Shown here piece after piece: positions 7,596 through 50,279 of a stretch of 64,000 nt of DNA. The position numbers and the translations under genes were made by a program. The number at the start of each line of letters is the position of its first letter. Positions within the stretch are counted from its first letter, which is position 1. The notes under the pieces were generated by a model. It had not been told where the DNA came from. It did not search any database and saw only the letters and a program-made list of their open reading frames with translations. Origin of the DNA: Phyllobates terribilis (lineage: Eukaryota); NCBI RefSeq assembly GCF_046119375.1, contig NW_027362766.1, forward strand, positions 10,106,001 to 10,170,000, written 5' to 3'.

Positions 7596-8429
7596 TATAT
7601 ACTGTATAATCCATGCGTTGGAATCGGGAGTTGTATATACCACACGCTCACTGTTACGTTTCCCCAATAACCGGCCTATTAGTGGAAACAAGCTGCAGCC
7701 TCCTCCATTAATCATCAGTCAATCGCGTAATTTTCTGGACAATAGGGGGAAGTGGAGACCTGTTTGTGACAAAAAGATCTGCATGACATCCCAGGCTGTG
7801 ATCCTTGACATTAGCAATCAAAATTCTTCCCCCAATTCTGCAGATTTTTCTTCTCAATTGCAGCCTGGTAGCCTTATTGGAGTTTGTGGAGATGCATGCA
7901 TTTTTGGGTTTTGGTGGGGGTCAACCATGAACCGAAGGAAAGCGGTAAGTGGGCTGGTCGGAGGAGTACACCGCAGAGGAGTTAGCTGCTGCATGCGACT
8001 AGTGTCGCAGTCTTCTTGTCTCAGCTACGTAGTGTTGGACATTGCATGACCCTATCAGCATCGGTGGTTCCCAACCTGCACAGATATCGTTTTCCTGGTC
8101 TACACACTGGACAGAGCGGCCGTAAACCAGGGGATAAAAGCCCCCAATAAAGAAAAGCAGTAATGTAGAGCTGAATAGATGTCACAGAGGGAGGAATCAG
8201 GCGATAAATTAACAAAACCTTTATTAACAGAAACAATATATATTACACAACTTGTAAACATGGCGAACCGGAACGTGCAACAATGCAAACTGCAGCCAGA
8301 GGGGGCGCTGCTCAGGACTCGTCCTCGATCACTATTACATCATTGCTGGAGCTCAGGAGCGTGTCTACGGAAAAAGGGCAAGAGTAAATGAGAGGGACTG
8401 ATTGGTGCCCAGAGATTAAAAGGGAGCAA

Positions 8430-9245
8430 GTAAGAAGACAAAACACGAGAAGAATGGAGGGATAGAGCGAAAGGGAGCCAAAGCATCAGAAGAAGGACGA
8501 AGAGAGCAAGCGAGAGGGAGCCAAAGCATTAGAAGAAGGACAAAGGGAGCAAGCGAGAGGGAGCCAAAGCATTAGAAGAAGGACAAAGGGAGCAAGCGAG
8601 AGGGAGCCAAAGCATTAGAAGAATGATGGATGGAGCGCGCGAGAGCTAAAGAGTCAGAAGAAGGACGAAGGGAGCAAAGCGAGAGGGAGCCAAAGCATTA
8701 GAAGAATGATGGATGGAGAGCGCGAGAGCCAAAGCGTCAGAAGGGGGACTTAGTGAGTGAGCGAGAGGGAGCCAAAAGCGTCAGAAGAATGGAAGGAGTG
8801 AGAGGGAGCCAAAGCATCAGAAGGACAAAGGGAGCAAGCGAGAGGGAGCCAAAGCATTAGAAGAAGGACAAAGGGAGCAAGCGAGAGGGAGCCAAAGCAT
8901 TAGAAGAAGGACAAAGGGAGCAAGCGAGAGGGAGCCAAAGCATCAGAAGAATGATGGATGGAGCGCGCGAGAGCTAAAGAGTCAGAAGAAGGACGAAGGG
9001 AGCAAAGCGAGAGGGAGCCAAAGCATTAGAAGAATGATGGATGGAGCGCGCGCGAGAGCCAAAGCGTCAGAAGGGGGACAAAGTGAGTGAGCGAGAGGGA
9101 GCCAAAGCATCAGGACCAGCGGAGTGAGCGAGAGTGAGGGAACCAAAGCATCAGAAGGAAGCAGCAAGCGAGAGCAGGATGGAAGGAGAGTGAGAGAGAG
9201 CGCCAAAGCACCAGAAGAAGGACGGAAGGAGCGAGCGAGAGGGAG
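8430..9245. repeat. Degenerate purine-rich tandem repeat (~43-bp unit)
   Basis: Recurrent GCGAGAGGGAGCCAAAGCATTAGAAGAAGGACAAAGGGAGCAA. Confidence 0.85.
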
Positions 9246-9617
9246 CCTGTCATGGAGTAAAGTAAAATGCTTACAGAGATGAGAGAGAAGAACTTGCACT
9301 CTCCTCTGTGCAGCTGCCTCCCTCCTTTTGGAATTAGGCAACCATAGATACTCCAATGGCTAAACAGATGTGATGTGTGTGCTTTAGGAATGTGGATCAG
9401 ATTTATGACCGAGATAAGCATTATAGGAACATAAAGATCTAGGATTCTCTTTTGTGGGCTTAGTAGAATAGTAAAAAGGGAGGTTTGCATGAAATGCGCC
9501 AATCCAATATATAGGAAAATCATATTTTCGGAAACATGATGACGTGACGAATGCAAAGCATAGTTTCAAGTTGCTGAGCGATGAGTAGAATCGTGTCAAT
9601 TGAATACGGACCTAATA

Positions 9618-10090
9618 CAACCCCTGGCAAAAATTATGGAACCACCGGGCTCGGAGGATGTTCATTGTTGTTGAAAAAAAGCAGATCACAGACATGGCAC
9701 AAAACTAAAGTCATTTCAAATGGCAACTTTAGGGCTTTAAGAAACACTAAAAGAAATCAAGATTAAAAATGTGGTACTCAGTAAGGGTAATTTTTTTTCA
9801 GACCAAGCAGAGGGAAAAAAAATTATGGAACCACCCTGTAAATTTTCATTTCCAAAACTTACAATTGCATCAAATTAGATCTGCTCGTTAGCCTGCATCT
9901 AAAAAGGAGTGATCACACCTTGGAGAGCTGTTGCACCAAGTGGACTGACATGAATCATGGCTCCAACAGGAGAGATGTCAATTGAAACAAAGGAGAGGAT
10001 TATCAAACTCCTAAAAGAAGGTAAATCATCACTCAATGTTGCAAAAGATGTTGGTTGTTCACAGTTAGCTGTGTCTAAAATCCGGACCAA
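9618..10090 (+). mobile_element. Tc1-like element, 5' fragment
   Basis: TA then CAACCCCTGGCAAAAATTATGGA. An internal direct repeat AAAAATTATGGAACCACC near 9818 gives IR/DR architecture. The transposase start at 9957 (MAPTGEMSIETKERIIKLLKEGKS...) is cut off at a T run. Confidence 0.8.
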
Positions 10091-10254
10091 ATTTTTTTTT
10101 TTCTCCTAAGTTTATATCTGAATATTCTATGAGAATTCGTTGCACGCAAATCTTGTCTAAGTAGGAGTTAATATCCTAATTTGTATACTAATCTATCACA
10201 CATGTTTAGGGGTGGTCACAGTTTTTATTATAAATGTGTTGTTTTTTAATTCAT

Positions 10255-10470
10255 TTGTATACTGACGAATAAGGGGCTGTGTCCTCGAAACGCGTCCAGT
10301 TGTTCCCCTCCTAGGGACATGTTGTGATTTTTAATTTTGGAATAAAAGGATTTATCGCATGTGGCACTGGATTTTACCTTCTTTATATACCCTTGCAAGT
10401 GTATGCTGGACACTAATCCGTGAGCCTGGGATTCCTGTGAGTATCAGGTGATATGAGCTAATTATCTTTT
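10255..10470 (+). mobile_element. Possible Penelope-like pseudo-LTR remnant
   Basis: CTGACGA...CGAAACGCGTC hammerhead-like core followed by AATAAA in AT-rich sequence. No ORF nearby. Confidence 0.4.
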
Positions 10471-11047
10471 TTTAGTCTATGTACCATAAGCTCACTATTA
10501 GTTTTCCAATAACTGGCCTGTTAATGCAAACAGCCTGCAACCTCTTACGTTAATCGTCGGCCAATTGTGTAATTGTCTGAATGATAGGGGGCAGCAGAGA
10601 GCTGTTTGCTCAAGAGATCACAGCGGGTGGTCCTGCGTGACCTTCCCAGGCTGTGATAATCCTGACAGAGCCAACAGGCCAGAAAGTCGGAGGGGGCGAG
10701 CAAGAGGGGGCCAAAGCGTCAAAAGAAGTATGTTGGGAGTGGCCAGGCCTGAGTAAAATAGGGAGTGAGCAAGAGGGTCCAAGTGCAGAGATTTGGGCGC
10801 AGAATGCAAAAAAGAAGGGAGTAAATGAGAAAGCGATCAGGACTCAGTACAATAAATTAAAAAAGAGAGCGGGACACAGAGTGATAAAAAAGAAGGAAGG
10901 GAGTGAGTGAGATCAAGACCCAGAGTGCAAGATGGAGTGAGCCCAAAATAATATAAAAGGGGTGAAGTGTGAATTACACCATAAACTATGTAGCAGCGGC
11001 GCATCCCCCAGGCCAAGTGTTTGTCTTCGTTTTCCCACCACCATCAC

Positions 11048-14000
11048 TCAGTGGATTTTACCGGAATCCCTCGTCGCCTGTTTCACACCCGTCTGGACAG
11101 TGTCGTCCTCACTGTCGGAGCTGATAGTTATTATTTCTCCGGAGGAGCTGGTGATCATGGAGCTGGTGGACCGCTCATCAGTCAGGTAATAGAAACAGCC
11201 ACGCGGGGAGTTGATGCTGCTGTCCTCCGCGGAGGAGGACACAAAGCTCAGCCCCTCTGAGGATGTGCAGGTGGAGGAAGAGCCAGTCGCCTCCCCTGAG
11301 GAATCTGAAGATTTGTCTGAAGAGGCGGTGGACGGGCTGGAAGTCACAGGGTGGTCACTGTCATCTATGTGCATTTTTGCGATGGTCTGCTCCATGCTGT
11401 CCACTTCATCCACAGACTCCGGGCAGAACGTGGGGGTGGAAACGCTGCTCTGCTGGCGCTCGGGGCTGTGAAACACATCTGCTCGGATAACCTCAATAGA
11501 TCCATCTGGGATGTAGGTATCTGAGCGTTAACCAAGATGGTGGCCACATTTATCACCACAGCAGCCACTGATCTATTGCTAATAGGTTGTCATCAAGAGG
11601 TGGAGGGGTGCACCACCACAAAAAGGAAGTGACAACGGCTCAGACAGACCCTCTATAAACTGAACCCAAACATCATCCGACAAGACAACACTTACCAGAT
11701 GCCAGGCAACCCTCTTCCGGACGGCTAGAGAAACTGCCAGTGTCGGAGCCCGCAGACAGACCAGTGACTTCTTCCTGTAGGGGGCAGCACACAGTGAGCA
11801 GAGAATATTGACCACTATCTCCAGCGGTCAGGATGTTACCCACCAGGAGTCGAGCCACCAGAGAGTCCTCTTCATCGCCCTTGGTGGGGCTCACCTGGCA
11901 CTCAATGGCATGGCCCTGGCGGATCAGCTCCAGACCGATGTCCAGCATCTGCAAGAAAATGGACAAGGACTAGAGGGTCACGCTACCCATCCTGCATTAC
12001 ATCCCTTCTATCCTTCACTCACAGCCAGAGCTGCAGTCATGTCTGATGTAATAGCTTAAATTGTAACTGCAGCTCTGGCTGTGAGTGAAGTACAGATCTG
12101 ATATAACAGCAGATGTATAACTGGTTGTGATGTGCTGTAATGCAGTCAGTCACACATCACACTCCACTCACAGCCGAAGCTGCCATGTGGGAGATTTCAT
12201 CTTCCAGGATGTTAACGACTGCTTTACATCCTGAGAGGACTATGCACGCTGCTTTGGATGTGGCTGGAGCGAATGTCTGGACTCACGGGGTCACTGGAAG
12301 GGTCATACAGTTTTATCTGGAAGCAGCAAGACACCCCGGGAGATGGAAAACTGGAAATTTTGGCGAGCAGCGGCTTCCATTCAGCGCAGTGCGACAAGGC
12401 GTCAAAAGCGTCTAGCGCCTGATCCGACCACGTCCCCCCTGTCGGGACAAGAGATCGCAATAAGGAAGCGGCCCCCAGAAGACAAGTGTGTACTGCACGG
12501 ACAACCAACATGGCCACAGCTCCTAGAAGTGGTCACTGGCTCGGAGTACTGCAGACATTCGGGTAGGCACGGTTCAGCACATCTGCTTTCTTTAGATGTA
12601 ATGGCGGCCATCTTGGTTGTCACTGATCTGCAGGACAACTCACCGCGGGGAGCGACACCAGAGAGGCGGCATTCAACGGCCTGGAACGGGAGACTCAGAA
12701 AGTCACTCCTGGAAGAGGACAAGTTCACGGTTACACAGGACGGCGGCTGGACCTGGTCATCACACCGGGAAGGCGGGGAGCAGTCACTCACCGCAGCGGA
12801 TGCAGCTCCTCTCTCGCCGTGTCCCAGTTGTCGCCGTAGTCCACGTAGTATAAATCCACGTTTCCGTTTTTCAGGAAGCCCAGCACCTCCGCCCGGTACC
12901 AGAACTCATCAACGTGGAAGGGAGCAGCCACAATGTCACCCACCTGGATCTCCGGCACTGCCCCCTGACAAAGCAGTGACATCATAAGGGGGAGGAGCAA
13001 CTAATCAAGGTGGTGACATCATAATGGAAGGGTGACTAATCAGTGCATCAAATAGAACCCCCCCATACAGGAACTGCAGCCAATAGAAATCTGGGCGGCG
13101 GGGAGGGGGGAGTGGCTAGAGTTGTCAGGACACACCCTCTTCCTCCCCCGGTAGTGGTCACTCATCTCTGTGGTCAGTTTGTCCAGCTGTGAGGAGCGGG
13201 ATCCCAGGATTTGGATCCAGAAGTGTTCGGGTTTCTCCGTGGCTGACACGTAGACGTCCACATACTCATCCGCACGGAAACTGAAGTCCGGGCTCGGGAC
13301 TGGAAGAACACAAAATGAAGAGCGATCTCCGGGGCACACACGACATCACACACAACTTCCATAGAAGGAGAATTTGTAGATATCACCGCCCCTCCCACAA
13401 CCAATCAGGAGTGCTAGCAGGGGTCATGTGATGCTACAGTAAGATGCAGATACCCTCAAACTTGCAGATGTTGGAGGGGAAGTCGGCCATATTTTCTGGG
13501 GCCGGTGATTGGTCCTCTACAGAGCCCATGGTCTGGGGACCTTCCCTGGGAGACGGCTGCCCATCCTTCTCTTCCTCTTGGGGGTGCTGCCTGTCTTTCT
13601 TCTTCACAGCGATGATCTCTTTCCGGCGTGAGCGGAAGGTGGAAGACTCTGCGGCTCTGCGCTGGACAGCGGCGTCCTCCTCTGATGCTTTCTGGAGGAG
13701 GGTCTGACAGGAGGGGCAGAGGGTTATGATGGGGTGACACAGACTTACTTCACTCCTCCTCTCAGCCATCGCACCTTGGCTGCCTCCACTTGCTCCCTAG
13801 TTCCGGTGAGGGTGATCCGTTGGGTACCCGGGGCAGCCTGGCTGTTCTCTGTCCGCCGCTCACAGTAGATTTTGGCACCAGAAATTCTGGTTATTTCCCG
13901 GATCCGCTCACCACCTTGTCCTGCAGACGACAGAAGACCGACTGCAGGGAGCTGCATGCCCAGCGCCCCCAAGCCTCTGAATTCTCAAATCAGGCCTGAC

Positions 14001-15316
14001 CGAAGCCCTGTGTTACACATGGCCGCCATTATCGGCTCCTCGTGTTACCTATGATGCGGCCCATAGACCTGGCCGGGAAATGCAGCTCAACCTTCAGCGC
14101 AGCAGCGTCCTGCAGGATCTCGTTCAGCTGTGCGGGGCTGCCCATAACAGTCAGCCCGTGTTTTCCACTGTCCGGCACCGCAGACGCTTCAACCTGAGCG
14201 AGCCTGTGTCTCATCACCTGAGAAGAGGAACCATTATATGGGAAAACATGGCGTCACCTGGCAAATGGGCAGATCCGACAGCTGGGACTCACCTTGTCAG
14301 AGACAGCGCCATCCTGATCAACGACGAGCTCCGCGGCCAACAGAGGAACGGTAACCTGCAGCTCGTCCGGTGTCTGCTCAGGGGCTGGAGACAACAGACG
14401 AGTGAGTGGGGGGCCAGAGGCGACAGGGGGCCGGAGGCCTGCAGCTCGTCCTGTGTGTTCAGGGGCTGGAGACAACACAAAGAGTGAGCAGAGGGGGCCG
14501 GAAGCGACAGAGACCTGCAGCTCCTCCGGTGTGTGCTCAGTGGCTGGAGACAACAGACGAGTGAGTGGGGGGCCGGAGGCGACAGGGGGCTGGAGGCCTG
14601 CAGCTCGTCCTGTGTGCTCAGGGGCCGGAGGCGACAGGGGGCCGGTGGCCTGCAGCTCGTCCTGTGTGCTCAGGGGCCGGAGGCCTGCAGCTCGTCCTGT
14701 GTGCTCAGGGGCCGGAGGCCTGCAGCCCGTCAGGTGTGTGCTCAGGGGCTGGAGACAACACAAACGAGTAAGCAGAGGGGGGCCGGAGGCGACAGAGACC
14801 TGCAGCTCCTCCGGTGTGTGCTCAGTGGCTGGAGACAACAGACGAGTGAGTGGGGGGCCAGAGGCGACAGGGGGCCGGAGGCCTGCAGCTCGTCCTGTGT
14901 GCTCAGGGGCTGGAGACAACACAGACGAGTGAGCAGAGGGGGCCGGAGGTGACAGAGACCTGCAGCTCCTCCGGTGTGTGCTCAGTGGCTGGAGACAACA
15001 GATGAGTGAGTGGGGGGCCGGAGGTGACAGGGGGCTGGAGGCCTGCAGCTCATCCTGTGTGCTCAGGGGCTGGAGGCCTGCAGCTCGTCCTGTGTGCTCA
15101 GGGGCTGGAGACAACATAGACGAGTGAGCAGAGGGCTGGAGGCGACAGGGGGCCGGAGGCGACAGGGGGCCGGAGGCGACAGGGGGCCGAGGTCTCCAGC
15201 TCCTCACCTGTCCGGTACCGGGTGTAGCACGTGTACAGAAGGACCGCTCCGGCTGATACTCCCATCGTCACGGCAACCTTTTGCCCGGTGGTAAGGCCGC
15301 TCCAACGCTCCATCAT
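11048..15316 (-). CDS. TDRKH: Tudor and KH domain-containing protein (TDRD2), ~658 aa
   Basis: Coding exons (minus): 15208-15316, 14293-14384, 14049-14217, 13775-13920, 13454-13703, 13136-13299, 12792-12964, 12644-12708, 12287-12438, 11844-11948, 11696-11774, 11048-11520. All are GT-AG and phase-consistent (1977 nt). N-terminal hydrophobic anchor, KH2 (GRIIGQGG) and extended Tudor (PSPDFSF...FWIQILG...GDIVAAPF..WYRA..YYVDYGDN...LPFQAVEC). The last two exons are less certain. Confidence 0.92.
14385..15200 (-). repeat. Composite minisatellite built from the TDRKH intron/exon junction
   Basis: Repeated minus-strand TGTTGTCTCCAG|CCCCTGAGCACACAGGACGAGCTGCAG modules match the true acceptor at 14384/14385. 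Confidence 0.9.
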
Positions 15317-15472
15317 CCACTCGCTGCACCGTCACTATACCCGACTCGCCCCAGAAACTAAAATAACGGAAGAAACGTGTACAGCCACTCCTGACAGCCG
15401 GCCAGTACCCTCCCGCTACCGAGCAGCTCCCGGGGGGCGGCCAGCGCCGCTACTTCAGTATTATCTACTCAC

Positions 15473-15540
15473 CCTCCAGAGCTGCGGACATCACGGCCGG
15501 TGCTCTGCGCTACTGAAGCCAGCGGTGCTGAGGGGGCGGT
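15473..15540 (-). other. TDRKH: Putative non-coding first exon of TDRKH
   Basis: Donor GAGG|GTGAGT at 15472 and acceptor TTTTAG| at 15358 upstream of the ATG exon. The TSS is not defined. Confidence 0.55.
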
Positions 15541-15578
15541 GACTTCCGGGTGCAGCAAGATGGCGTCAGAGCATGCGC
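15531..15578. promoter_or_regulatory. Bidirectional CpG-island promoter core (GC box, ETS, YY1, NRF1-like)
   Basis: GGGGGCGG at ~15531-15538, ACTTCCGG at 15542-15549, CAAGATGGCG at 15556-15565 and GCATGCGC at 15571-15578, between divergent donor sites at 15472 (minus) and 15622 (plus). Confidence 0.7.
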
Positions 15579-15579
15579 T

Positions 15580-15621
15580 GTGTGGCGTGCTGGGAAAACG
15601 GGACGGAACAGGACCCCGAAC
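15580..15621 (+). other. SLC39A1: Putative non-coding first exon of SLC39A1
   Basis: Donor AAC|GTGAGG at 15622. Matching acceptor TCCTGTAG| at 18138 precedes the Kozak ATG. Confidence 0.5.
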
Positions 15622-15725: not shown

Positions 15726-17965
15726 TTGAAGTCGGCGTCCCTTACCCCACCGCCCTCCGTAGTCAACGTCCCTTACCCCACCGCCCTCCGTAGTCAACGT
15801 CCCTTACCCCACCGCCCTCCGTAGTCAACGTCCCTTACCCCACCGCCCTCCGTAGTCAACGTCCCTTACCCCACCGCCCTCCGTAGTCGGCTTCCCTTAC
15901 CCCACCGCCCTCCGTAGTCGGCTTCCCTTACCCCACCGCCCTCCGTAGTCGGCTTCCCTTACCCCACCGCCCTCCGTAGTCGGCTTCCCTTACCCCACCT
16001 CCCTCCGTAGTCGGCTTCCCTTACCCCACCGCCCTCCGTAGTCGGCTTCCCTTACCCCACCGCCCTCCGTAGTCGGCGCCCCTTACCCCACCGCCCTCCG
16101 TAGTCGGCGCCCCTTACCCCACCGCCCTCCGTAGTCGGCGCCCCTTACCCCACCGCCCTCCGTAGTCAACGTCCCTTACCCCACCGCCCTCCGTAGTCAA
16201 CGTCCCTTACCCCACCGCCCTCCGTAGTCAACGTCCCTTACCCCACCGCCCTCCGTAGTCAACGTCCCTTACCCCACCGCCCTCCGCAGTCAACGTCCCT
16301 TACCCCACCGCCCTCCGCAGTCGGCGTCCCTTACCCCACCGCCCTCCGTAGTCGGCGTCCCTTACCCCACCGCCCTCCGTAGTCGGCTTCCCTTACCCCA
16401 CCGCCCTCCGTAGTCGGCGCCCCTTACCCCACCGCCCTCCGTAGTCGGCGCCCCTTACCCCACCGCCCTCCGTAGTCGGCGCCCCTTACCCCACCGCCCT
16501 CCGTAGTCGGCGCCCCTTACCCCACCGCCCTCCGTAGTCGGCGCCCCTTACCCCACCGCCCTCCGTAGTCGGCGCCCCTTACCCCACCGCCCTCCGTAGT
16601 CGGCGCCCCTTACCCCACCGCCCTCCGTAGTCGGCGCCCCTTACCCCACCGCCCTCCGTAGTCGGCGCCCCTTACCCCACCGCCCTCCGTAGTCGGCGCC
16701 CCTTACCCCACCGCCCTCCGTAGTCGGCGCCCCTTACCCCACCGCCCTCCGTAGTCGGCGCCCCTTACCCCACCGCCCTCCGTAGTCAACGTCCCTTACC
16801 CCACCGCCCTCCGTAGTCAACGTCCCTTACCCCACCGCCCTCCGTAGTCAACGTCCCTTACCCCACCGCCCTCCGTAGTCGGCTTCCCTTACCCCACCGC
16901 CCTCCGTAGTCGGCTTCCCTTACCCCACCGCCCTCCGTAGTCGGCTTCCCTTACCCCACCGCCCTCCGTAGTCGGCGCCCCTTACCCCACCGCCCTCCGT
17001 AGTCGGCGCCCCTTACCCCACCGCCCTCCGTAGTCGGCGCCCCTTACCCCACCGCCCTCCGTAGTCGGCGCCCCTTTACCCCACCGCCCTCCGTAGTCGG
17101 CGTCCCTTTACCCCACCGCCCTCCGTAGTCGGCGTCCCTTTACCCCACCGCCCTCCGTAGTCGGCGTCCCTTTACCCCACCGCCCTCCGCAGTCGGCGTC
17201 CCTTTACCCCACCGCCCTCCGCAGTCGGCGTCCCTTTACCCCACCGCCCTCCGCAGTCGGCGTCCCTTTACCCCACCGCCCTCCGCAGTCGGCGTCCCTT
17301 TACCCCACCGCCCTCCGCAGTCGGCGTCCCTTTACCCCACCGCCCTCCGCAGTCGGCGTCCCTTTACCCCACCGCCCTCCGCAGTCGGCGTCCCTTTACC
17401 CCACCGTCCTCCGCAGTCGGCGTCCCTTTACCCCACCGTCCTCCGCAGTCGGCGTCCCTTTACCCCACCGCCCTCCGCAGTCGGCGTCCCTTTACCCCAC
17501 CGCCCTCCGTAGTCGGCGTCCCTTTACCCCACCGCCCTCCGTAGTCGGCGTCCCTTTACCCCACCGCCCTCCGCAGTCGGCGTCCCTTTACCCCACCGCC
17601 CTCCGCAGTCGGCGTCCCTTTACCCCACCGTCCTCCGCAGTCGGCGTCCCTTTACCCCACCGTCCTCCGCAGTCGGCGTCCCTTTACCCCACCGTCCTCC
17701 GCAGTCGGCGTCCCTTTACCCCACCGTCCTCCGCAGTCGGCGTCCCTTTACCCCACCGTCCTCCGCAGTCGGCGTCCCTTTACCCCACCGTCCTCCGCAG
17801 TCGGCGTCCCTTACCCCACCGTCCTCCGCAGTCGGCGTCCCTTACCCCACCGTCCTCCGCAGTCGGCGTCCCTTACCCCACCGCCCTCCGCAGTCGGCGT
17901 CCCTTACCCCACCGCCCTCCGTAGTCGACGTCCTTTACCCCATCGCCCTCCGTAGTCGGCGCCCG
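15726..17965. repeat. 31-32-bp C-rich minisatellite (~70 copies)
   Basis: Unit AGTCGGCGTCCCTTACCCCACCGCCCTCCGT with blocks of variant units. Confidence 0.97.
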
Positions 17966-18163
17966 CTTCCCCTCCGGCGTGCTGCCTTTTTTCCCCTCCG
18001 GCGTGCTGCCTTTTTTCCCCTCCGGCGTGCTGCCTTTTTTCCCCTCCGGTGTGCTCCCCGCGGTCGGTGCGGACCTCTGGGTCTGTGTTCTGCCTGGATC
18101 AGTTAATAATCCCTAGCATGGCATCTGCTGTCCTGTAGTGATCGGTACGTCCTTCCTCCCACC

Positions 18164-19392: not shown

Positions 19393-21342
19393 GGCGGTGA
19401 CTATACCGCCCCCTATATGCAGAACATGACTGTACCAGCGGTGACAATACCGCCCGCTATATGCAGAACATGACTGTACCAGCGGTGACTGTACTGCCCC
19501 TATATACAGGACATAACTGTAGTACCAGCAGTGACTATACTGCCCCTATATACAGAACATGACTGTACCAGCAGTGACTATACCGCCCCCTATATACAGA
19601 ACATGACTGTACCAGCAGTGACTACACCGCCCCCTATATACAGAACATGACTGTACCAGCAGTGACTATACCGCCCCTATATACAGAACATGACTGTAGT
19701 ACCAGCAGTGACTATACCGCCCCTATATACAGAACATGCCTGTAGTACCAGCAGTGACTATACCGCCCCTATATTCAGAACATGACTGTAGTACCAGCAG
19801 TGATTATACCGCCCCCTATATACAGAACATAACTGTACCAGCGGTGACTATACCACCCCCTATATACAGGACATGACTGTAGTACCAGCAGTGACTATAC
19901 CGCCCCTATATACAGAACATGACTGTAGTACCAGCAGTGACTATACCGCCCCTATATACAGAACATGACTGTAGTACCAGCAGTGACTATACCGCCCCTA
20001 TATACAGAACATGACTGTAGTACCAGCAGTGACTATACCGCCCCCTATATACAGAACATGACTGTACCAGCAGTGACTATACCGCCCTCTATATACAGAA
20101 CATGACTGTACCAGCAGTGACTATACCGCCCCTATATACAGAACATGACTGTACAAGCAGTGACTATACCGCCCCTATATACAGAACGTGACTGTACCAG
20201 CAGTGGCTATACCGCCCCTATATGCAGAACGTGACTGTACCAGCAGTGACTATACCGCCCCTATATACAGAACATGACTGTACAAGCAGTGACTATACCG
20301 CCCCTATATACAGAACGTGACTGTACCAGCAGTGGCTATACCGCCCCTATATACAGAACGTGACTGTACCAGCAGTGACTATACCGCCCCTATATACAGA
20401 ACGTGACTGTACAAGCAGTGACTATACCGCTCCTATATACAGAACGTGACTGTACCAGCAGTGACTATACCGCCCCTATATACAGAACGTGACTGTACCA
20501 GCAGTGACTATACCGCCCCTATATACAGAACGTGACTGTACCAGCAGTGGCTATACCGCCCCTATATACAGAACGTGACTGAACCAGCAGTGACTATACC
20601 GCCCCTATATACAGAACGTGACTGTACCAGCAGTGACTATACCGCCCCCTATATACAGAACGTGACTGTACCAGCAGTTACTACACTGCCCCTATATACA
20701 GAGCATGACTGTAGTGCCAGCAGTGACTATACCGCCCCCTATATACAGAGCATGACTGTAGTACCAGCAGTGACTATACCGCCCCCTATATACAGAACAT
20801 GACTACCAGCAGTGACTATACCGCCCCTATATACAGAGCATGACTGTAGTACCAGCAGTGACTATACCGCCCCCTATATACAGAACATGACTGTACCAGC
20901 AGTTACTACACTGCCCCTATATACAGAACATGACTGTACCAGCAGTTACTATACTGACCCTATATACAGAACATGACTGTACCAGCAGTGACTATACCGC
21001 CCCTATATTCAGAACATGACTGTATCAGCAGTAGCCATACCGCCCCTATATACAGAACGTGACTGTACTAGCAGTGACTATACTGCCCCTATATACAGAA
21101 TGTGACTGTACCAGCAGTGACTATACCGCCCCTATATACTGAGCATGACTGTAGTACCAGCAGTGGCTATACCGCCCCCTATATACAGAACATGACTGTA
21201 CCAGCAGTGACTATACTGCCCCTATATACAGAGCATGACTGTAGTACCAGCAGTGACTATACCGCCCCTATATACAGAACATGACTGTACCAGCAGTGAC
21301 TATACCGCCCCCTATATACAGAGCAGTGACTATACCGCCCCC
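19393..21342. repeat. 43-47-bp minisatellite (putative SLC39A1 3' UTR)
   Basis: Unit CAGCAGTGACTATACCGCCCCTATATACAGAACATGACTGTAC, with or without an extra TAG. Confidence 0.95.
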
Positions 21343-21800: not shown

Positions 21801-22037
21801 GCACCCACTAATTAGCTCCACCTTATTTGCATGTAAGCCCCGCCTTCTGCCTCTTAATGGCGGTATTTTGCGTCCCGGCCTCGCGTGCTCAGACGGTGCG
21901 GCAGGGTGTGGGATTTTTGGGCCGGTAATAATGGAGTAGTGATTATTTTCTACATGTTTTGGTGGCGTCGGTTTCATACCGGAGATTTGTGGGTTTTTTA
22001 TTGCCTGGATGTTTTGTACTCGGCCGCGTGTGCTTCA

Positions 22038-22043
22038 AATAAA
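22038..22043 (+). terminator. Candidate SLC39A1 polyadenylation signal
   Basis: First AATAAA I found downstream of the SLC39A1 stop. Confidence 0.45.
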
Positions 22044-22062
22044 TATAATTTACACTATTAAG

Positions 22063-25000
22063 GGGGAGGTATTATCAGGTCGCGCCGTGTGTGAGGTGAT
22101 TATATAGCGGGGAGGTATTATCAGGCTGCAGCGTGTGTGAGGTGATTATATAGCGGGGAGGTATTATCAGGCTGCAGCGTGTGTGAGGTGATTATATAGC
22201 GGGGAGGTATTATCAGGTCGCAGCGTGTGTGAGGTGATTATATAGCGGGGAGGTATTATCAGGCTGCACCGTGTGTGAGGTGATTATATAGCGGGGAGGT
22301 ATTATCAGGCTGCAGCGTGTGTGAGGTGATTATATAGCGGGGAGGTATTATCAGGCTGCACCGTGTGTGAGGTGATTATATAGCGGGGAGGTATTATCAG
22401 GCTGCAGCGTGTGTGAGGTGATTATATAGCGGGGAGGTATTATCAGGCTGCAGCGTGTATGAGGTGATTATATAGCGGGGAGGTATTATCAGGCTGCAGC
22501 GTGTGTGAGGTGATTATATAGCGGGGAGGTATTATCAGGCTGCAGCGTGTGTGAGGTGATTATATAGCGGGGAGGTATTATCAGGCTGCAGCGTGTGTGA
22601 GGTGATTATATAGCGGGGAGGTATTATCAGGCTGCAGCGTGTGTGAGGTGATTATATAGCGGGGAGGTATTATCAGGCTGCAGCGTGTGTGAGGTGATTA
22701 TATAGCGGGGAGGTATTATCAGGCTGCAGCGTGTGTGAGGTGATTATACAGCGGGGAGGTATTATCAGGCTGCAGCGTGTGTGAGGTGATTATATAGCGG
22801 GGAGGTATTATCAGGCTGCAGCGTGTGTGAGGTGATTATATAGCGGGGAGGTATTATCAGGTCGCAGCGTGTGTGAGGTGATTATATAGCGGGGAGGTAT
22901 TATCAGGCTGCAGCGTGTGTGAGGTGATTATATAGCGGGGAGGTATTATCAGGCTGCAGCGTGTGTGAGGTGATTATATAGCGGGGAGGTATTATCAGGT
23001 CGCAGCGTGTGTGAGGTGATTATATAGCGGGGAGGTATTATCAGGCTGCAGCGTGTGTGAGGTGATTATATAGCAGGGAGGTATTATCAGGTCGCAGCGT
23101 GTGTGAGGTGATTATATAGCGGGGAGGTATTATCAGGTCGCAGCGTGTGTGAGGTGATTATATAGCGGGGAGGTATTATCAGGCTGCAGCGTGTGTGAGG
23201 TGATTATATAGCGGGGAGGTATTATCAGGTCGCAGCGTGTGTGAGGTGATTATATAGCGGGGAGGTATTATCAGGTCGCAGCGTGTGTGAGGTGATTATA
23301 TAGCGGGGAGGTATTATCAGGCTGCAGCGTGTGTGAGGTGATTATATAGCGGGGAGGTATTATCAGGCTGCAGCGTGTGTGAGGTGATTATATAGCGGGG
23401 AGGTATTATCAGGCTGCAGCGTGTGTGAGGTGATTATATAGCGGGGAGGTATTATCAGGCTGCAGCGTGTGTGAGGTGATTATATAGCGGGGAGGTATTA
23501 TCAGGCTGCAGCGTGTGTGAGGTGATTATATAGCGGGGAGGTATTATCAGGTCGCAGCGTGTGTGAGGTGATTATATAGCGGGGAGGTATTATCAGGCTG
23601 CAGCGTGTGTGAGGTGATTATATAGCGGGGAGGTATTATCAGGTCGCAGCGTGTGTGAGGTGATTATATAGCGGGGAGGTATTATCAGGCTGCAGCGTGT
23701 GTGAGGTGATTATATAGCGGGGAGGTATTATCAGGTCGCAGCGTGTGTGAGGTGATTATATAGCGGGGAGGTATTATCAGGCTGCAGCGTGTGTGAGGTG
23801 ATTATATAGCGGGGAGGTATTATCAGGTCGCAGCGTGTGTGAGGTGATTATATAGCGGGGAGGTATTATCAGGCCGCAGCGTGTGTGAGGTGATTATATA
23901 GCGGGGAGGTATTATCAGGTCGCAGCGTGTGTGAGGTGATTATATAGCGGGGAGGTATTATCAGGTCGCAGCGTGTGTGAGGTGATTATATAGCGGGGAG
24001 GTATTATCAGGCTGCAGCGTGTGTGAGGTGATTATATAGCGGGGAGGTATTATCAGGCTGCAGCGTGTGTGAGGTGATTATATAGCGGGGAGGTATTATC
24101 AGGCTGCAGCGTGTGTGAGGTGATTATATAGCGGGGAGGTATTATCAGGTCGCAGCGTGTGTGAGGTGATTATATAGCGGGGAGGTATTATCAGGTCGCA
24201 GCGTGTGTGAGGTGATTATATAGCGGGGAGGTATTATCAGGCTGCAGCGTGTGTGAGGTGATTATATAGCGGGGAGGTATTATCAGGTCGCAGCGTGTGT
24301 GAGGTGATTATATAGCGGGGAGGTATTATCAGGCTGCAGCGTGTGTGAGGTGATTATATAGCGGGGAGGTATTATCAGGTCGCAGCGTGTGTGAGGTGAT
24401 TATATAGCGGGGAGGTATTATCAGGCTGCAGCGTGTGTGAGGTGATTATATAGCGGGGAGGTATTATCAGGTCGCAGCGTGTGTGAGGTGATTATATAGC
24501 GGGGAGGTATTATCAGGTCGCAGCGTGTGTGAGGTGATTATATAGCGGGGAGGTATTATCAGGCTGCAGCGTGTGTGAGGTGATTATATAGCGGGGAGGT
24601 ATTATCAGGTCGCAGCGTGTGTGAGGTGATTATATAGCGGGGAGGTATTATCAGGCTGCAGCGTGTGTGAGGTGATTATATAGCGGGGAGGTATTATCAG
24701 GTCGCAGCGTGTGTGAGGTGATTATATAGCGGGGAGGTATTATCAGGTCGCAGCGTGTGTGAGGTGATTATATAGCGGGGAGGTATTATCAGGCTGCAGC
24801 GTGTGTGAGGTGATTATATAGCGGGGAGGTATTATCAGGCTGCAGCGTGTGTGAGGTGATTATATAGCGGGGAGGTATTATCAGGCTGCAGCGTGTGTGA
24901 GGTGATTATATAGCGGGGAGGTATTATCAGGCTGCAGCGTGTGTGAGGTGATTATATAGCGAGGAGGTATTATCAGGTCGCAGCGTGTGTGAGGTGATTA

Positions 25001-27997
25001 TATAGCGGGGAGGTATTATCAGGTCGCGCCGTGTGTGAGGTGATTATATAGCGGGGAGGTATTATCAGGCTGCAGCGTGTGTGAGGTGATTATATAGCGG
25101 GGAGGTATTATCAGGCTGCAGCGTGTGTGAGGTGATTATATAGCGGGGAGGTATTATCAGGCTGCAGCGTGTGTGAGGTGATTATATAGCGGGGAGGTAT
25201 TATCAGGCTGCAGCGTGTGTGAGGTGATTATATAGCGGGGAGGTATTATCAGGCTGCAGCGTGTGTGAGGTGATTATATAGCGGGGAGGTATTATCAGGC
25301 TGCAGCGTGTGTGAGGTGATTATATAGCGGGGAGGTATTATCAGGCTGCAGCGTGTGTGAGGTGATTATATAGCGGGGAGGTATTATCAGGTCGCAGCGT
25401 GTGTGAGGTGATTATATAGCGGGGAGGTATTATCAGGTCGCAGCGTGTGTGAGGTGATTATATAGCGGGGAGGTATTATCAGGCTGCAGCGTGTGTGAGG
25501 TGATTATATAGCGGGGAGGTATTATCAGGTCGCAGCGTGTGTGAGGTGATTATATAGCGGGGAGGTATTATCAGGCTGCAGCGTGTGTGAGGTGATTATA
25601 TAGCGGGGAGGTATTATCAGGTCGCAGCGTGTGTGAGGTGATTATATAGCGGGGAGGTATTATCAGGTCGCAGCGTGTGTGAGGTGATTATATAGCGGGG
25701 AGGTATTATCAGGCTGCAGCGTGTGTGAGGTGATTATATAGCGGGGAGGTATTATCAGGTCGCAGCGTGTGTGAGGTGATTATATAGCGGGGAGGTATTA
25801 TCAGGTCGCGCCGTGTGTGAGGTGATTATATAGCGGGGAGGTATTATCAGGCTGCAGCGTGTGTGAGGTGATTATATAGCGGGGAGGTATTATCAGGCTG
25901 CAGCGTGTGTGAGGTGATTATATAGCGGGGAGGTATTATCAGGCTGCAGCGTGTGTGAGGTGATTATATAGCGGGGAGGTATTATCAGGTCGCGCCGTGT
26001 GTGAGGTGATTATATAGCGGGGAGGTATTATCAGGCTGCACCGTGTGTGAGGTGATTATATAGCGGGGAGGTATTATCAGGCTGCAGCGTGTGTGAGGTG
26101 ATTATATAGCGGGGAGGTATTATCAGGCTGCACCGTGTGTGAGGTGATTATATAGCGGGGAGGTATTATCAGGCTGCAGCGTGTGTGAGGTGATTATATA
26201 GCGGGGAGGTATTATCAGGCTGCAGCGTGTGTGAGGTGATTATATAGCGGGGAGGTATTATCAGGCTGCAGCGTGTGTGAGGTGATTATATAGCGGGGAG
26301 GTATTATCAGGCTGCAGCGTGTGTGAGGTGATTATATAGCGGGGAGGTATTATCAGGCTGCAGCGTGTGTGAGGTGATTATATAGCAGGGAGGTATTATC
26401 AGGTCGCAGCGTGTGTGAGGTGATTATATAGCGGGGAGGTATTATCAGGCTGCAGCGTGTGTGAGGTGATTATATAGCGGGGAGGTATTATCAGGCTGCA
26501 GCGTGTGTGAGGTGATTATATAGCGGGGAGGTATTATCAGGTCGCAGCGTGTGTGAGGTGATTATATAGCGGGGAGGTATTATCAGGCTGCAGCGTGTGT
26601 GAGGTGATTATATAGCGGGGAGGTATTATCAGGTCGCAGCGTGTGTGAGGTGATTATATAGCGGGGAGGTATTATCAGGCTGCAGCGTGTGTGAGGTGAT
26701 TATATAGCGGGGAGGTATTATCAGGTCGCAGCGTGTGTGAGGTGATTATATAGCGGGGAGGTATTATCAGGTCGCAGCGTGTGTGAGGTGATTATATAGC
26801 GGGGAGGTATTATCAGGCTGCAGCGTGTGTGAGGTGATTATATAGCGGGGAGGTATTATCAGGTCGCAGCGTGTGTGAGGTGATTATATAGCGGGGAGGT
26901 ATTATCAGGCTGCAGCGTGTGTGAGGTGATTATATAGCGGGGAGGTATTATCAGGTCGCGCCGTGTGTGAGGTGATTATATAGCGGGGAGGTATTATCAG
27001 GCTGCAGCGTGTGTGAGGTGATTATATAGCGGGGAGGTATTATCAGGCTGCAGCGTGTGTGAGGTGATTATATAGCGGGGAGGTATTATCAGGCTGCAGC
27101 GTGTGTGAGGTGATTATATAGCGGGGAGGTATTATCAGGCTGCAGCGTGTGTGAGGTGATTATATAGCGGGGAGGTATTATCAGGTCGCAGCGTGTGTGA
27201 GGTGATTATATAGCGGGGAGGTATTATCAGGCTGCAGCGTGTGTGAGGTGATTATATAGCGGGGAGGTATTATCAGGCTGCAGCGTGTGTGAGGTGATTA
27301 TATAGCGGGGAGGTATTATCAGGCTGCAGCGTGTGTGAGGTGATTATATAGCGGGGAGGTATTATCAGGCTGCAGCGTGTGTGAGGTGATTATATAGCGG
27401 GGAGGTATTATCAGGCTGCAGCGTGTGTGAGGTGATTATATAGCGGGGAGGTATTATCAGGCTGCAGCGTGTGTGAGGTGATTATATAGCGGGGAGGTAT
27501 TATCAGGCTGCAGCGTGTGTGAGGTGATTATATAGCGGGGAGGTATTATCAGGCTGCAGCGTGTGTGAGGTGATTATATAGCGGGGAGGTATTATCAGGC
27601 TGCAGCGTGTGTGAGGTGATTATATAGCGGGGAGGTATTATCAGGTCGCAGCGTGTGTGAGGTGATTATATAGCGGGGAGGTATTATCAGGCTGCAGCGT
27701 GTGTGAGGTGATTATATAGCGGGGAGGTATTATCAGGTCGCAGCGTGTGTGAGGTGATTATATAGCGGGGAGGTATTATCAGGTCGCAGCGTGTGTGAGG
27801 TGATTATATAGCGGGGAGGTATTATCAGGCTGCAGCGTGTGTGAGGTGATTATATAGCAGGGAGGTATTATCAGGTCGCAGCGTGTGTGAGGTGATTATA
27901 TAGCAGGGAGGTATTATCAGGTCGCAGCGTGTGTGAGGTGATTATATAGCGGGGAGGTATTATCAGGTCGCAGCGTGTGTGAGGTGATTATATAGCA
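22063..27997. repeat. 46-bp minisatellite (~129 copies)
   Basis: Unit GTATTATCAGGCTGCAGCGTGTGTGAGGTGATTATATAGCGGGGAG, highly homogeneous. Confidence 0.98.
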
Positions 27998-28648
27998 GGA
28001 TTGTGGGTGACATTACACTGATTAATATGACACCTTGGTTGATGAAATCCGTCCTGTGGTTCTTGTGTAATCTTTACTTTCAGTCTGGAGATAATGATAT
28101 GCTCGTGCTTTGGGACGGGCGCTCTATCTTGTGCTCCGGGGCGGCCTGTGGGGGGCGCTCTATCTGGTGCTCTGCTTACATATTCATCTGTATGCTCTTA
28201 TGACAGCTCACTGATCGGCCTCCTATGTTATATAATGCATCTAGCAGTGCGGGGCGACGTAATAGGAGGCCGGTCAGTGACTGATCAGTGAGCTGTCATA
28301 AGAGCATACAGATGAATATGTAAGCAGAGCACCAGATAGAGCGCTCCCCACAGGCCGCCCCGGAGCACCAGATAGAGCGCTCCCCACAGGCCGCCCCGGA
28401 GCACCAGATAGAGCGCTCCCCACAGGCCGCCCCGGAGCACCAGATAGAGCGCTCCCCACAGGCCGCCCCGGAGCACCAGATAGAGCGCTCCCCACAGGCC
28501 GCCCCGGAGCACGAGCATATCATTATCTCCAAACTGAGTATAGATTACACAAGAACCGCAGGATGGATTTCATCAACCAAGGTATCATATTAATCAGTGT
28601 AATGTCACCCTCCTGACAGTGTATGTAGTTACTGAGCACAATCCTGCT
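27994..28648. mobile_element. Palindromic MITE with an internal 40-bp tandem repeat
   Basis: Arms GGGTGACATTACACTGATTAATATGA...GAAATCC and GGATTTC...TCATATTAATCAGTGTAATGTCACCC, with outer AGCAGGATTGT/ACAATCCTGCT. The right arm holds ~5 copies of GAGCACCAGATAGAGCGCTCCCCACAGGCCGCCCCG. Confidence 0.8.
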
Positions 28649-29832: not shown

Positions 29833-30023
29833 CTGGGAGATGTAGTTTTGGACACGGTTGCAATTACTATATTGACGCCGCCTTGAACTTTATTTCCCGG
29901 CATGCAGCGGTCCGGCGCCGCCCGCGCCCCGTAGTGGTGAGCGGGGTTTGTAGTCCGCCGTCGCTTCCGATGCCGCCTGTAGAGCGGAGTTAGGGCGGAA
30001 CAGGACTACGGTTCCCGGCGTGC
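29833..30023. promoter_or_regulatory. CRTC2 promoter with four ZNF143/THAP11 (ACTACA-NN-TCCC)-like motifs
   Basis: Minus ACTACATCTCCCAG (29833-29846), plus ACTTTATTTCCCGGCATGC (29887-29905), minus GGACTACAAACCCC (29943-29956) and plus ACTACGGTTCCCGGCGTGC (30005-30023), in CpG-rich DNA. Confidence 0.65.
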
Positions 30024-30082
30024 CCGGCACCGCGGCTTCACTCCCCCTATATCCCATCGGCGCCTACGGAAGGGCTGGAAAA

Positions 30083-49974: not shown

Positions 49975-50172
49975 CGCTGCACTTTTCTATGTTTTCTAGG
50001 TGAATCTTATTTATTGACTCCGGATTTTGCAGGCAAAACGTGGACGCGGAGTTTATTTTCTGCAGTCGCCCCAGTGAAGGAAAATCCCTTTTTTCTCTCC
50101 ACTTCCTTTTGTACGCCGCGCTGTATAAATGTATATATTTCTACCAAGACGTCCTTTTTATAAGATAGCGAA

Positions 50173-50178
50173 AATAAA
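50173..50178 (+). terminator. Candidate CRTC2 polyadenylation signal
   Basis: First AATAAA I found after the CRTC2 stop, in AT-rich unique sequence. Confidence 0.5.
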
Positions 50179-50279
50179 GGAAAAAGAAAGGTGTGCCGCA
50201 GCCTTGTGTGAACGCGCGTCGGCAAACCGTCCCTGACACCATCAGTAACACACAGCTGCCTCTAGGTGGCAGGATATAG

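What the first reader, a model, noticed from the sequence alone, without database searches (positions are those of the whole stretch)
14385..15207. Tandemly amplified splice acceptor could give TDRKH a variable-length linker
Seen: the intron repeat contains seven extra copies of the exon-3 acceptor (TTGTCTCCAG|CC), with exon starts at 14465, 14543, 14748, 14828, 14909, 14988 and 15104 versus the true 14384. Five are in frame (+27, +53, +148, +175, +240 aa), and the frame has no stop over the whole array (ORF 14254-15207). Two (14748, 14988) shift the frame. The most upstream copy still leaves a 103-nt intron. Inference: acceptor choice and repeat copy number could set the distance between the mitochondrial anchor and the KH/Tudor module, or send transcripts to NMD, making a VNTR-encoded isoform ladder in a piRNA gene.
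Basis: partly seen in the sequence, partly recalled or inferred. Interest (0 to 1): 0.75.

Follow-up and report, generated by a model that had tools for sequence, protein, structure and literature searches.

The report
Repeat-copied splice acceptor in frog TDRKH
In the golden poison frog's piRNA-pathway gene TDRKH, a young tandem repeat has copied the start of exon 3 eight times; RNA data show that two of the copies are used, adding or omitting 27 amino acids, and no sign of the proposed many-step isoform ladder was found.

Summary
Eight identical copies of TTGTCTCCAG|CC lie at the stated positions on the minus strand. Every exon translation I compared (8 of the 14 coding exons) is 100% identical to RefSeq Phyllobates terribilis TDRKH.

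Spliced RNA contigs from four runs in two studies join donor 15208 to acceptor 14465 in all four runs. This is the first repeat-born copy and adds 27 aa. RefSeq already lists both forms: X1 and X3 carry the 27 aa, X2 does not.

No contig and no RefSeq isoform uses the six distal copies, so a two-step choice is shown, not a ladder. NMD isoforms were not seen, and copy-number polymorphism is untested.

The array is derived. Dendropsophus ebraccatus has a 67-nt intron 2 with one homologous acceptor. Dendrobates tinctorius has a single-copy intron of about 64 nt. Eight other frog proteins have the short linker.

This is a new member of a known kind; the closest case is the human ABCA7 VNTR, which copies a splice donor. 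The same scan had noted splice-donor arrays elsewhere in this genome (s1-224811).

The parts
8315..15600 (-). TDRKH gene of Phyllobates terribilis (exon 1 ends at 15473; last coding exon 8315-8365)
   Evidence: Spliced joints with GT..AG ends on the minus strand. Pfam KH_1 and TUDOR hits on exon ORFs. Best PDB matches are 'Tudor and KH domain-containing protein'. Eight of the 14 coding exons were translated and compared; each is 100% identical to XP_073493457.1.
15208..15357 (-). Exon 2, with ATG at 15316. It encodes the N-terminal hydrophobic anchor (MMERWSGLTTGQKVAVTMGVSAGAVLLYTCYTRYRT). Its donor is CAG|gtgagg at 15208/15207.
   Evidence: Joints 15357/15473 and 15208/14465; translation.
14385..15207 (-). 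Minisatellite filling intron 2. After three 17-nt units it alternates 81-nt 'beta' units and 78-80-nt 'alpha' units, each ending in a branch-point, pyrimidine-tract and AG cassette. Truncated 35/37/52-nt units without an acceptor are interspersed.
   Evidence: Beta units are 75-80 of 81 identical. The first ~30 nt of each alpha unit match the start of exon 3 at 27 of 30 positions.
14466..14475 (-). Acceptor copy used in all four runs (exon start 14465). It has the best pyrimidine tract of the eight (16 Y and 10 T in -23..-4) and a CTCAC branch-like motif 20 nt upstream.
   Evidence: Joint 14465/15208 in X1, X2, X5 and X6 (contig depths 99.6, 170.4, 51.8, 166.5). The contigs continue from 14465 to 14289 with 0 mismatches.. 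RefSeq X1/X3.
14385..14465 (-). Alternative 81-nt 5' extension of exon 3 (the last beta unit). It encodes the 27-aa insert APEHTGRAAGLRPPVASGPPLTRLLSP.
14385..14394 (-). Proximal acceptor copy (exon start 14384). It gives the ancestral-type short linker.
   Evidence: Joint 14384/15208 only in X5 (depth 44.2 against 51.8 for 14465). The 23-nt side is what a k=31 de Bruijn bubble gives when the two copies share CCCCTGA. RefSeq X2.
14293..14384 (-). Core of exon 3 (start of KH1). Its donor is AAG|gtgagt at 14293/14292.
14544..15114 (-). Span holding the six distal acceptor copies (exon starts 14543, 14748, 14828, 14909, 14988, 15104), none seen in use.
   Evidence: Zero contig depth in the bins covering 14542-15157 in all four runs. 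The depth of bin 14388-14541 is exactly that of 78 covered bases (14388-14465), so nothing lies on 14466-14541 either. No RefSeq isoform has a longer insert.
14049..14217 (-). Exon 4 (rest of KH1, start of KH2).
   Evidence: Joints; 100% match to P0153 residues 68-123.

Best explanation
A young, lineage-specific minisatellite arose by tandem amplification of almost the whole ancestral ~65-nt intron 2 plus the first ~30 nt of exon 3 of TDRKH. It enlarged the intron to 742 or 823 nt and left eight complete 3' splice-site cassettes (branch point, pyrimidine tract, AG). The spliceosome uses only the two cassettes nearest the exon-3 donor. The copy at 14465 predominates: it is the only form in three runs and about half in the fourth. 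It makes a TDRKH with 27 extra Pro/Gly/Ala-rich residues just after the membrane anchor. The copy at 14384 gives the ancestral-length protein and is abundant in one of four runs. The six distal copies are silent at the sensitivity of contigs.

Shown: the array, its derived status, and use of two acceptors. Inferred: why only these two are used. My reading is exon definition. Acceptors are recognised together with the strong downstream donor at 14293, which favours exons of 92 and 173 nt over 456-812 nt. The slightly better pyrimidine tract and upstream position of 14465 would favour it over 14384. Also inferred: the insert is a tolerated, probably disordered spacer and not a tuned device.
For: Exact repeat anatomy. 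All eight cassettes keep a YTNAY motif 19-21 nt upstream of the AG and 15-16 pyrimidines in 20, with 14465 the best. Joints 15208/14465 in 4 of 4 runs and 15208/14384 in 1 of 4, with no coverage of the distal array. RefSeq X1 (693 aa) and X3 carry the 27-aa insert and X2 (666 aa) lacks it. D. ebraccatus has a 67-nt intron 2 with the single homologous acceptor gttgtctcgcag|CC and no repeat there. The D. tinctorius X1 model reads through a single-copy intron 2 of about 21 codons that aligns with the repeat unit. Eight other frog TDRKH proteins have the short linker. The exon-3 donor AAG|gtgagt is close to consensus.
Against: The 14543 copy would give a 251-nt in-frame exon, still within the usual range of exon definition, yet it is not seen. 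So exon length alone does not explain the choice. Contigs drop rare variants, so use of distal copies at a few percent cannot be excluded. The stop-free frame across the whole array is somewhat unlikely by chance (about 1% for that frame and 3% for any frame in mononucleotide shuffles; about 1/64 from six frame-shifting unit lengths that always compensate). That could hint at selection on longer forms. Splice-site strength was judged only by crude counts, not by a trained model.
Confidence: 0.64

Rival explanations
1. Genotype, not splice choice. The array is length-polymorphic. The 'short' junction comes from alleles in which unequal crossing-over removed the last 81-nt unit. Each allele would then have one dominant acceptor, and run X5 would be a heterozygote.
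For: The short and long forms are near 1:1 in X5 (44.2 against 51.8) and the short form is absent from the contigs of X1, X2 and X6. That is the pattern expected for heterozygote against homozygotes. Units are 93-99% identical, which favours unequal exchange. The two studies differ at a fixed SNP (14080), so different stocks were sampled.
Against: No DNA run was available, so no length variant has been seen. X5 also differs from the others in carrying intron-retaining contigs (12936-13164 and 13893-14077), which suggests a different tissue or RNA preparation instead. In the reference allele both cassettes are intact and nearly equal in quality.
Confidence: 0.25
2. Many of the eight acceptors are used, giving a ladder of linker lengths (+27 to +240 aa) plus frameshifted NMD substrates, tuned by repeat copy number.
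For: All eight cassettes look competent. Five are in frame and the frame is open throughout. Two of them are demonstrably used.
Against: There is zero contig coverage across the distal array in four runs where the gene stands at k-mer depth 100-170. RefSeq models only the +0 and +27 forms. A word search with the 337-aa array ORF found no matching protein of 185-590 aa, the length range that search could see. Exons of 456-812 nt are poorly defined in vertebrates (established knowledge).
Confidence: 0.08
3. Assembly or alignment artefact. The 14384 or 14465 junction is produced by mis-assembly of repeat k-mers, and only one acceptor is really used.
For: The copies share long identical stretches, and de Bruijn contigs can mis-join repeats.
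Against: The 14465 copy carries a private base (CCCCTGAAC instead of CCCCTGAGC), and the contigs match 14465-14289 with 0 mismatches in three runs with 131-150 nt on the shorter side of the joint. The 23-nt sides in X5 are exactly what a true bubble gives. RefSeq lists both forms, though possibly from overlapping data.
Confidence: 0.03

Closest known systems
Human ABCA7 intron-18 VNTR (PMC5954066)
   Same: A minisatellite starts at a real splice site and copies it in every unit. Use of the neighbouring unit's copy keeps one repeat unit in the mRNA. The array is GC-rich and intronic.
   Different: ABCA7 copies the donor, its unit is 25 nt, and the retained unit shifts the frame to a PTC in a minor isoform. 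Here the acceptor is copied, the unit is 81 nt and in frame, and the repeat-born copy has become the predominant site. ABCA7 length polymorphism (12-427 units) is measured; here it is untested.
Alternatively spliced introns and exon changes born from tandem arrays (Zhuo et al. 2007 PNAS, cited in PMC2812944; De Grassi and Ciccarelli 2009, PMC2812944)
   Same: Internal tandem repeats carrying splice signals change exon-intron structure and often leave both the old and the new transcript forms.
   Different: Those are human surveys, mostly of repeats inside exons that create new introns. Here an existing ~65-nt intron was inflated and its acceptor multiplied. I could not read the 2007 paper itself.
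Tandem acceptors (NAGNAG 'wobble' splicing, PMC2699507)
   Same: Two adjacent, near-equivalent acceptors compete and give in-frame protein variants.
   Different: NAGNAG sites are 3 nt apart and share one branch point and tract. Here the sites are 81 nt apart, and each has its own branch point and tract.
Splice-donor arrays at first introns elsewhere in this frog genome (earlier finding s1-224811)
   Same: Same genome; locally made tandem repeats that copy a real splice site many times.
   Different: Those copy donors at first introns, and they were judged a tolerated by-product without shown use of the extra copies. I did not re-test them.

Membership tests
Splice-site-copying minisatellite with use of more than one copy | The tandem repeat includes a bona fide splice site. 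| tested here: met
   The array at 14355-15211 overlaps the exon-3 acceptor and the first ~30 nt of exon 3.
Splice-site-copying minisatellite with use of more than one copy | The copies keep the full signal (branch point, pyrimidine tract, AG). | tested here: met
   All 8 have a YTNAY motif 19-21 nt upstream, 15-16 Y in 20, and identical last 10 nt. Strength was judged by counts only.
Splice-site-copying minisatellite with use of more than one copy | Transcripts join the same donor to more than one copy. | tested here: met
   15208/14465 in 4 runs and 15208/14384 in 1 run; RefSeq X1/X3 against X2. Only 2 of 8 copies are used.
Splice-site-copying minisatellite with use of more than one copy | A derived state: relatives have a single site. 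| tested here: met
   D. ebraccatus has a 67-nt intron with one acceptor. D. tinctorius has a single-copy intron. Eight other frog proteins have the short linker.
VNTR in the strict sense (copy number varies between individuals) | Different array lengths in different individuals. | not tested
   High unit identity makes variation likely but does not show it.
Alternative splicing coupled to NMD | Frameshifting isoforms with premature stops are produced. | tested here: not met
   Junctions to 14748 or 14988 are absent from the contigs of four runs. Contigs cannot exclude rare or degraded forms.
TDRKH / Papi orthologue | N-terminal hydrophobic anchor, KH domains and an extended Tudor domain, orthologous to vertebrate TDRKH. 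| tested here: met
   KH_1 (E 2e-09) and TUDOR (E 1.5e-11 and 4e-08) on exon ORFs. PDB best hits are TDRKH. The eight exon translations compared are 100% identical to RefSeq P. terribilis TDRKH. KH1 itself is not detected by Pfam or PDB in exon pieces.

The most novel reading that the evidence does not exclude
The array is a length-polymorphic VNTR whose allele state sets the ratio of TDRKH linker isoforms. Its unbroken reading frame is kept by selection because more distal in-frame acceptors are used in particular germ-cell stages. Individuals would then differ heritably in the spacing between the mitochondrial anchor and the piRNA-trimming scaffold.
Probability: 0.08. Interest if true: 0.6.

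Novelty: new member of a known kind. Interest (0 to 1): 0.35.

Why it matters
This is a clean natural example of how a minisatellite can take over a splice site. A repeat-born acceptor has become the predominant one within a single poison-frog lineage. It adds 27 residues to the juxtamembrane linker of an essential piRNA-biogenesis scaffold, while the ancestral form is still made. It shows that TDRKH tolerates a much longer tether. It also offers a natural competition set of eight near-identical 3' splice sites for testing rules of acceptor choice. It does not open a long-standing question: the mechanism class is known, and both isoforms are already in RefSeq.

Tried and rejected
A word search with the 337-aa stop-free array ORF found nothing. 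That search sees only proteins of 185-590 aa, so it could not see the 666-693 aa TDRKH.

Pfam and PDB searches with exon 2, exon 3 and exon 4 pieces gave nothing for KH1.

The representative search with the Tudor exon was swamped by multi-Tudor proteins. One 86%-identical 660-aa hit (P0123) opened the way to the frog orthologues.

The look-up of encoding contigs returned no DNA for the P. terribilis and D. tinctorius records because the files are too large. The D. tinctorius intron was therefore inferred from its intron-reading X1 protein model.

Zhuo et al. 2007 is not held. Two literature searches for duplicated acceptors gave nothing more specific.

I considered that the whole array might be coding exon. 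I rejected this because the bins covering 14542-15157 have zero RNA depth, bin 14388-14541 is accounted for by 14388-14465 alone, and exon 2 is in another frame.

I considered a dispersed repeat. I rejected this because the motif occurs only in the array.

Joined exon models were translated only inside a script to count frames and stops.

Full report
**1. Observation**

The gene lies on the minus strand. Exon 2 ends ...CGGACAG|gtgagg at 15208/15207.

The 12-mer TTGTCTCCAGCC occurs eight times in the window, all on the minus strand. The exon starts are 15104, 14988, 14909, 14828, 14748, 14543, 14465 and 14384. Chance expectation is 0.31 even with one mismatch allowed, and 0 of 100 shuffles reach 8. 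Tandem Repeats Finder finds the array at 14355-15211 with periods 81, 78, 160, 35, 52 and 17.

- Five copies are in frame: +27, +53, +148, +175 and +240 aa.
- The copies at 14748 and 14988 shift the frame and meet early stops.
- The most upstream copy leaves a 103-nt intron.

The exon-3 frame is open from 15267 to 14257. All 14 stop triplets in the array lie in the other two frames.

**2. Anatomy**

Cut at the recurring CC(C/A)CTGAGCAC motif, the array reads from 5' to 3' as follows:
- three 17-nt units;
- a first acceptor at 15104;
- 81-nt "beta" units alternating with 78-80-nt "alpha" units, each ending in an acceptor;
- truncated 35/37/52-nt units without an acceptor, interspersed.

The real exon 3 sits where the next alpha unit would be. 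Its first 30 nt match the alpha units at 27 of 30 positions. Beta units are 75-80 of 81 identical, and the 160-nt higher-order unit is 93% matched. The array is therefore young.

Every cassette keeps a CTCAC or CTTAC branch-like motif 19-21 nt upstream of the AG, and 15-16 pyrimidines in positions -23..-4. The 14465 copy is marginally the best, with 16 Y and 10 T.

**3. Identity of the gene**

Exon ORFs hit Pfam KH_1 and TUDOR. Their best solved-structure matches are "Tudor and KH domain-containing protein".

A representative search with the Tudor exon gave one 86%-identical 660-aa protein, TDRKH of Dendropsophus ebraccatus. Using its 664-aa isoform as the query in a word search returned the frog orthologues.

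Eight of the window's 14 coding exons were translated one at a time and compared. Each is 100% identical to XP_073493457.1, TDRKH isoform X2 of Phyllobates terribilis. The window is therefore from the golden poison frog. Its genome is described as large (12.6 Gb) and highly repetitive (PMC12208295).

**4. RNA evidence**

Eight runs from two studies hold 42-49% of the sampled words of the 4.4-kb gene stretch. That is about its exon share.

I laid four of them on 11000-15600. They skip every intron at GT..AG ends on the minus strand, so they are RNA.

Donor 15208 is joined to 14465 in all four runs:

| Run | Depth of joint to 14465 | Depth of joint to 14384 |
|---|---|---|
| X1 | 99.6 | none |
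| X2 | 170.4 | none |
| X6 | 166.5 | none |
| X5 | 51.8 | 44.2 |

- The contigs run on from 14465 to 14289 without a mismatch. They cross the private base of that copy (CCCCTGAAC).
- In X5 both joints have 23-nt sides. That is what a k=31 bubble gives when the two copies share CCCCTGA.
- The depth of bin 14388-14541 equals 78/154 of the contig depth in each run. Coverage therefore stops exactly at 14465.
- The bins covering 14542-15157 have zero depth in all four runs.

However, the "true" acceptor is mostly not 14384.

**5. Annotation**

The RefSeq cluster for this gene holds three isoforms: X1 (693 aa), X2 (666 aa) and X3 (545 aa). X1 and X3 carry APEHTGRAAGLRPPVASGPPLTRLLSP after ...RYRT, and X2 lacks it.

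The 27-aa difference is exactly the 81-nt unit. No isoform carries +53 aa or more. X3 skips exon 13 (11062-11505), and all three end in a small exon at 8315-8365.

**6. Evolution**

- In D. ebraccatus (locus L001), intron 2 is 67 nt. It ends ...cgtgttgtctcgcag|CCCCCC, which is clearly homologous to the P. terribilis acceptor, and it holds no repeat.
- The D. tinctorius isoform X1 is a model that reads through exon 2 in the other frame and through a single-copy intron 2 of about 21 codons. That stretch, VRKTPAVTGLPVRSLICVLSP, aligns with the repeat unit RPPVASGPPLTRLLSP.
- Dendrobates, Anomaloglossus, Dendropsophus, two Bufo species, Eleutherodactylus, Leptodactylus and one Logan-derived frog protein all have the short linker.

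The repeat unit therefore equals nearly the whole ancestral intron plus the first ~30 nt of exon 3. It was amplified after the Phyllobates and Dendrobates lineages split. The short isoform reproduces the ancestral protein, and the long one is the novelty.

**7. Mechanism (inferred)**

Each unit is a self-sufficient 3' splice site. Under exon definition, acceptors are recognised together with the downstream donor, which here is a strong AAG|gtgagt at 14293. This favours 92- and 173-nt exons over 456-812-nt ones.

Between the two used sites, 14465 is upstream and has the better tract.

This does not explain why 14543 is silent. It would give a 251-nt in-frame exon.

The 27 residues are Pro/Gly/Ala-rich and lie directly after the anchor. 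I read them as a tolerated flexible spacer. No evidence bears on function.

**8. The open frame**

Shuffles give about 1% for that frame and 3% for any frame.

The six unit lengths that are not multiples of 3 always compensate (+1, +2, +1, +2...), which is roughly 1 in 64 if the events are independent. But the units arose by block duplication, and the array is too young to have gained stops by point mutation.

I treat this as a weak hint only.

**9. Open rival**

The near 1:1 ratio in X5 against none in the other three runs would also fit a heterozygote for an allele lacking the last unit. X5 also differs in carrying intron-retaining contigs, which points instead to a different tissue or RNA preparation. 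Without DNA from the same animal this cannot be settled.

**10. Comparison and verdict**

The closest documented case is the human ABCA7 VNTR. It copies the exon-18 donor in every 25-nt unit, and its second copy is used in a minor frameshifting isoform (PMC5954066).

Tandem arrays as a source of new splice patterns are also known (PMC2812944 and its reference to Zhuo 2007).

The present case is a new member of that kind. Its distinguishing points are that the acceptor is copied, that the unit is in frame, and that the repeat-born copy has become the predominant site.

**Limits**
- All RNA evidence is from assembled contigs. These show presence, not absence or exact ratios.
- The tissues of the runs are unknown.
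- RefSeq may rest on overlapping data.

Noticed in passing
window 15730-17976: A 31-bp minisatellite of about 72 copies (97% matched) lies about 150-250 bp upstream of TDRKH exon 1. D. ebraccatus has a 33-bp array with a different consensus unit at the equivalent place, just upstream of its TDRKH coding start (L001 8145-9821).
   Followed up: partly
window 14293-14384 and 14049-14217 (KH1); alignment A2: The GXXG loop of KH1 reads DQDG in P. terribilis and D. tinctorius, but GQDG, GRDG or GPDG in five of the other frogs aligned; Anomaloglossus has a gap after GQ and the Ranitomeya model lacks this region. KH1 is also shorter here. Pfam and PDB searches do not detect KH1 in the exon pieces. KH1 may have lost RNA binding in dendrobatids.
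   Followed up: partly
window 11062-11505 and 8315-8365: The large Ser-rich exon 13 is optional (skipped in RefSeq X3). All isoforms end in a 17-codon exon about 2.7 kb downstream. Loose ends at 11062 in X1 and X6 match 8336-8364.
   Followed up: partly
window 12936-13164 and 13893-14077: Run X5 alone has contigs that run through introns 7 and 4 (depths 15 and 30). It is also the only run with the short exon-3 junction, so it may be a different tissue or a nuclear or pre-mRNA-rich sample.
   Followed up: no
P0275 (Dendrobates tinctorius TDRKH isoform X1): This RefSeq model starts at an upstream ATG, reads exon 2 in the wrong frame and reads through intron 2. It lacks the membrane anchor and looks like an intron-retention artefact, not a real isoform.
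   Followed up: partly
window 19397-21336, about 22000-28000, 30000-36000 and 50000-64000: The window is packed with further tandem arrays and strongly strand-skewed blocks: a 43-bp array of 44 copies, and GC-skew blocks of +0.5 to +0.6. Two runs of N lie at 36868-37023 and 38034-38133; I left them alone.
   Followed up: no
window 14080: A>G (plus strand) is fixed in both runs of study P2 and absent in both runs of study P1. The two studies therefore sampled different stocks.
   Followed up: no
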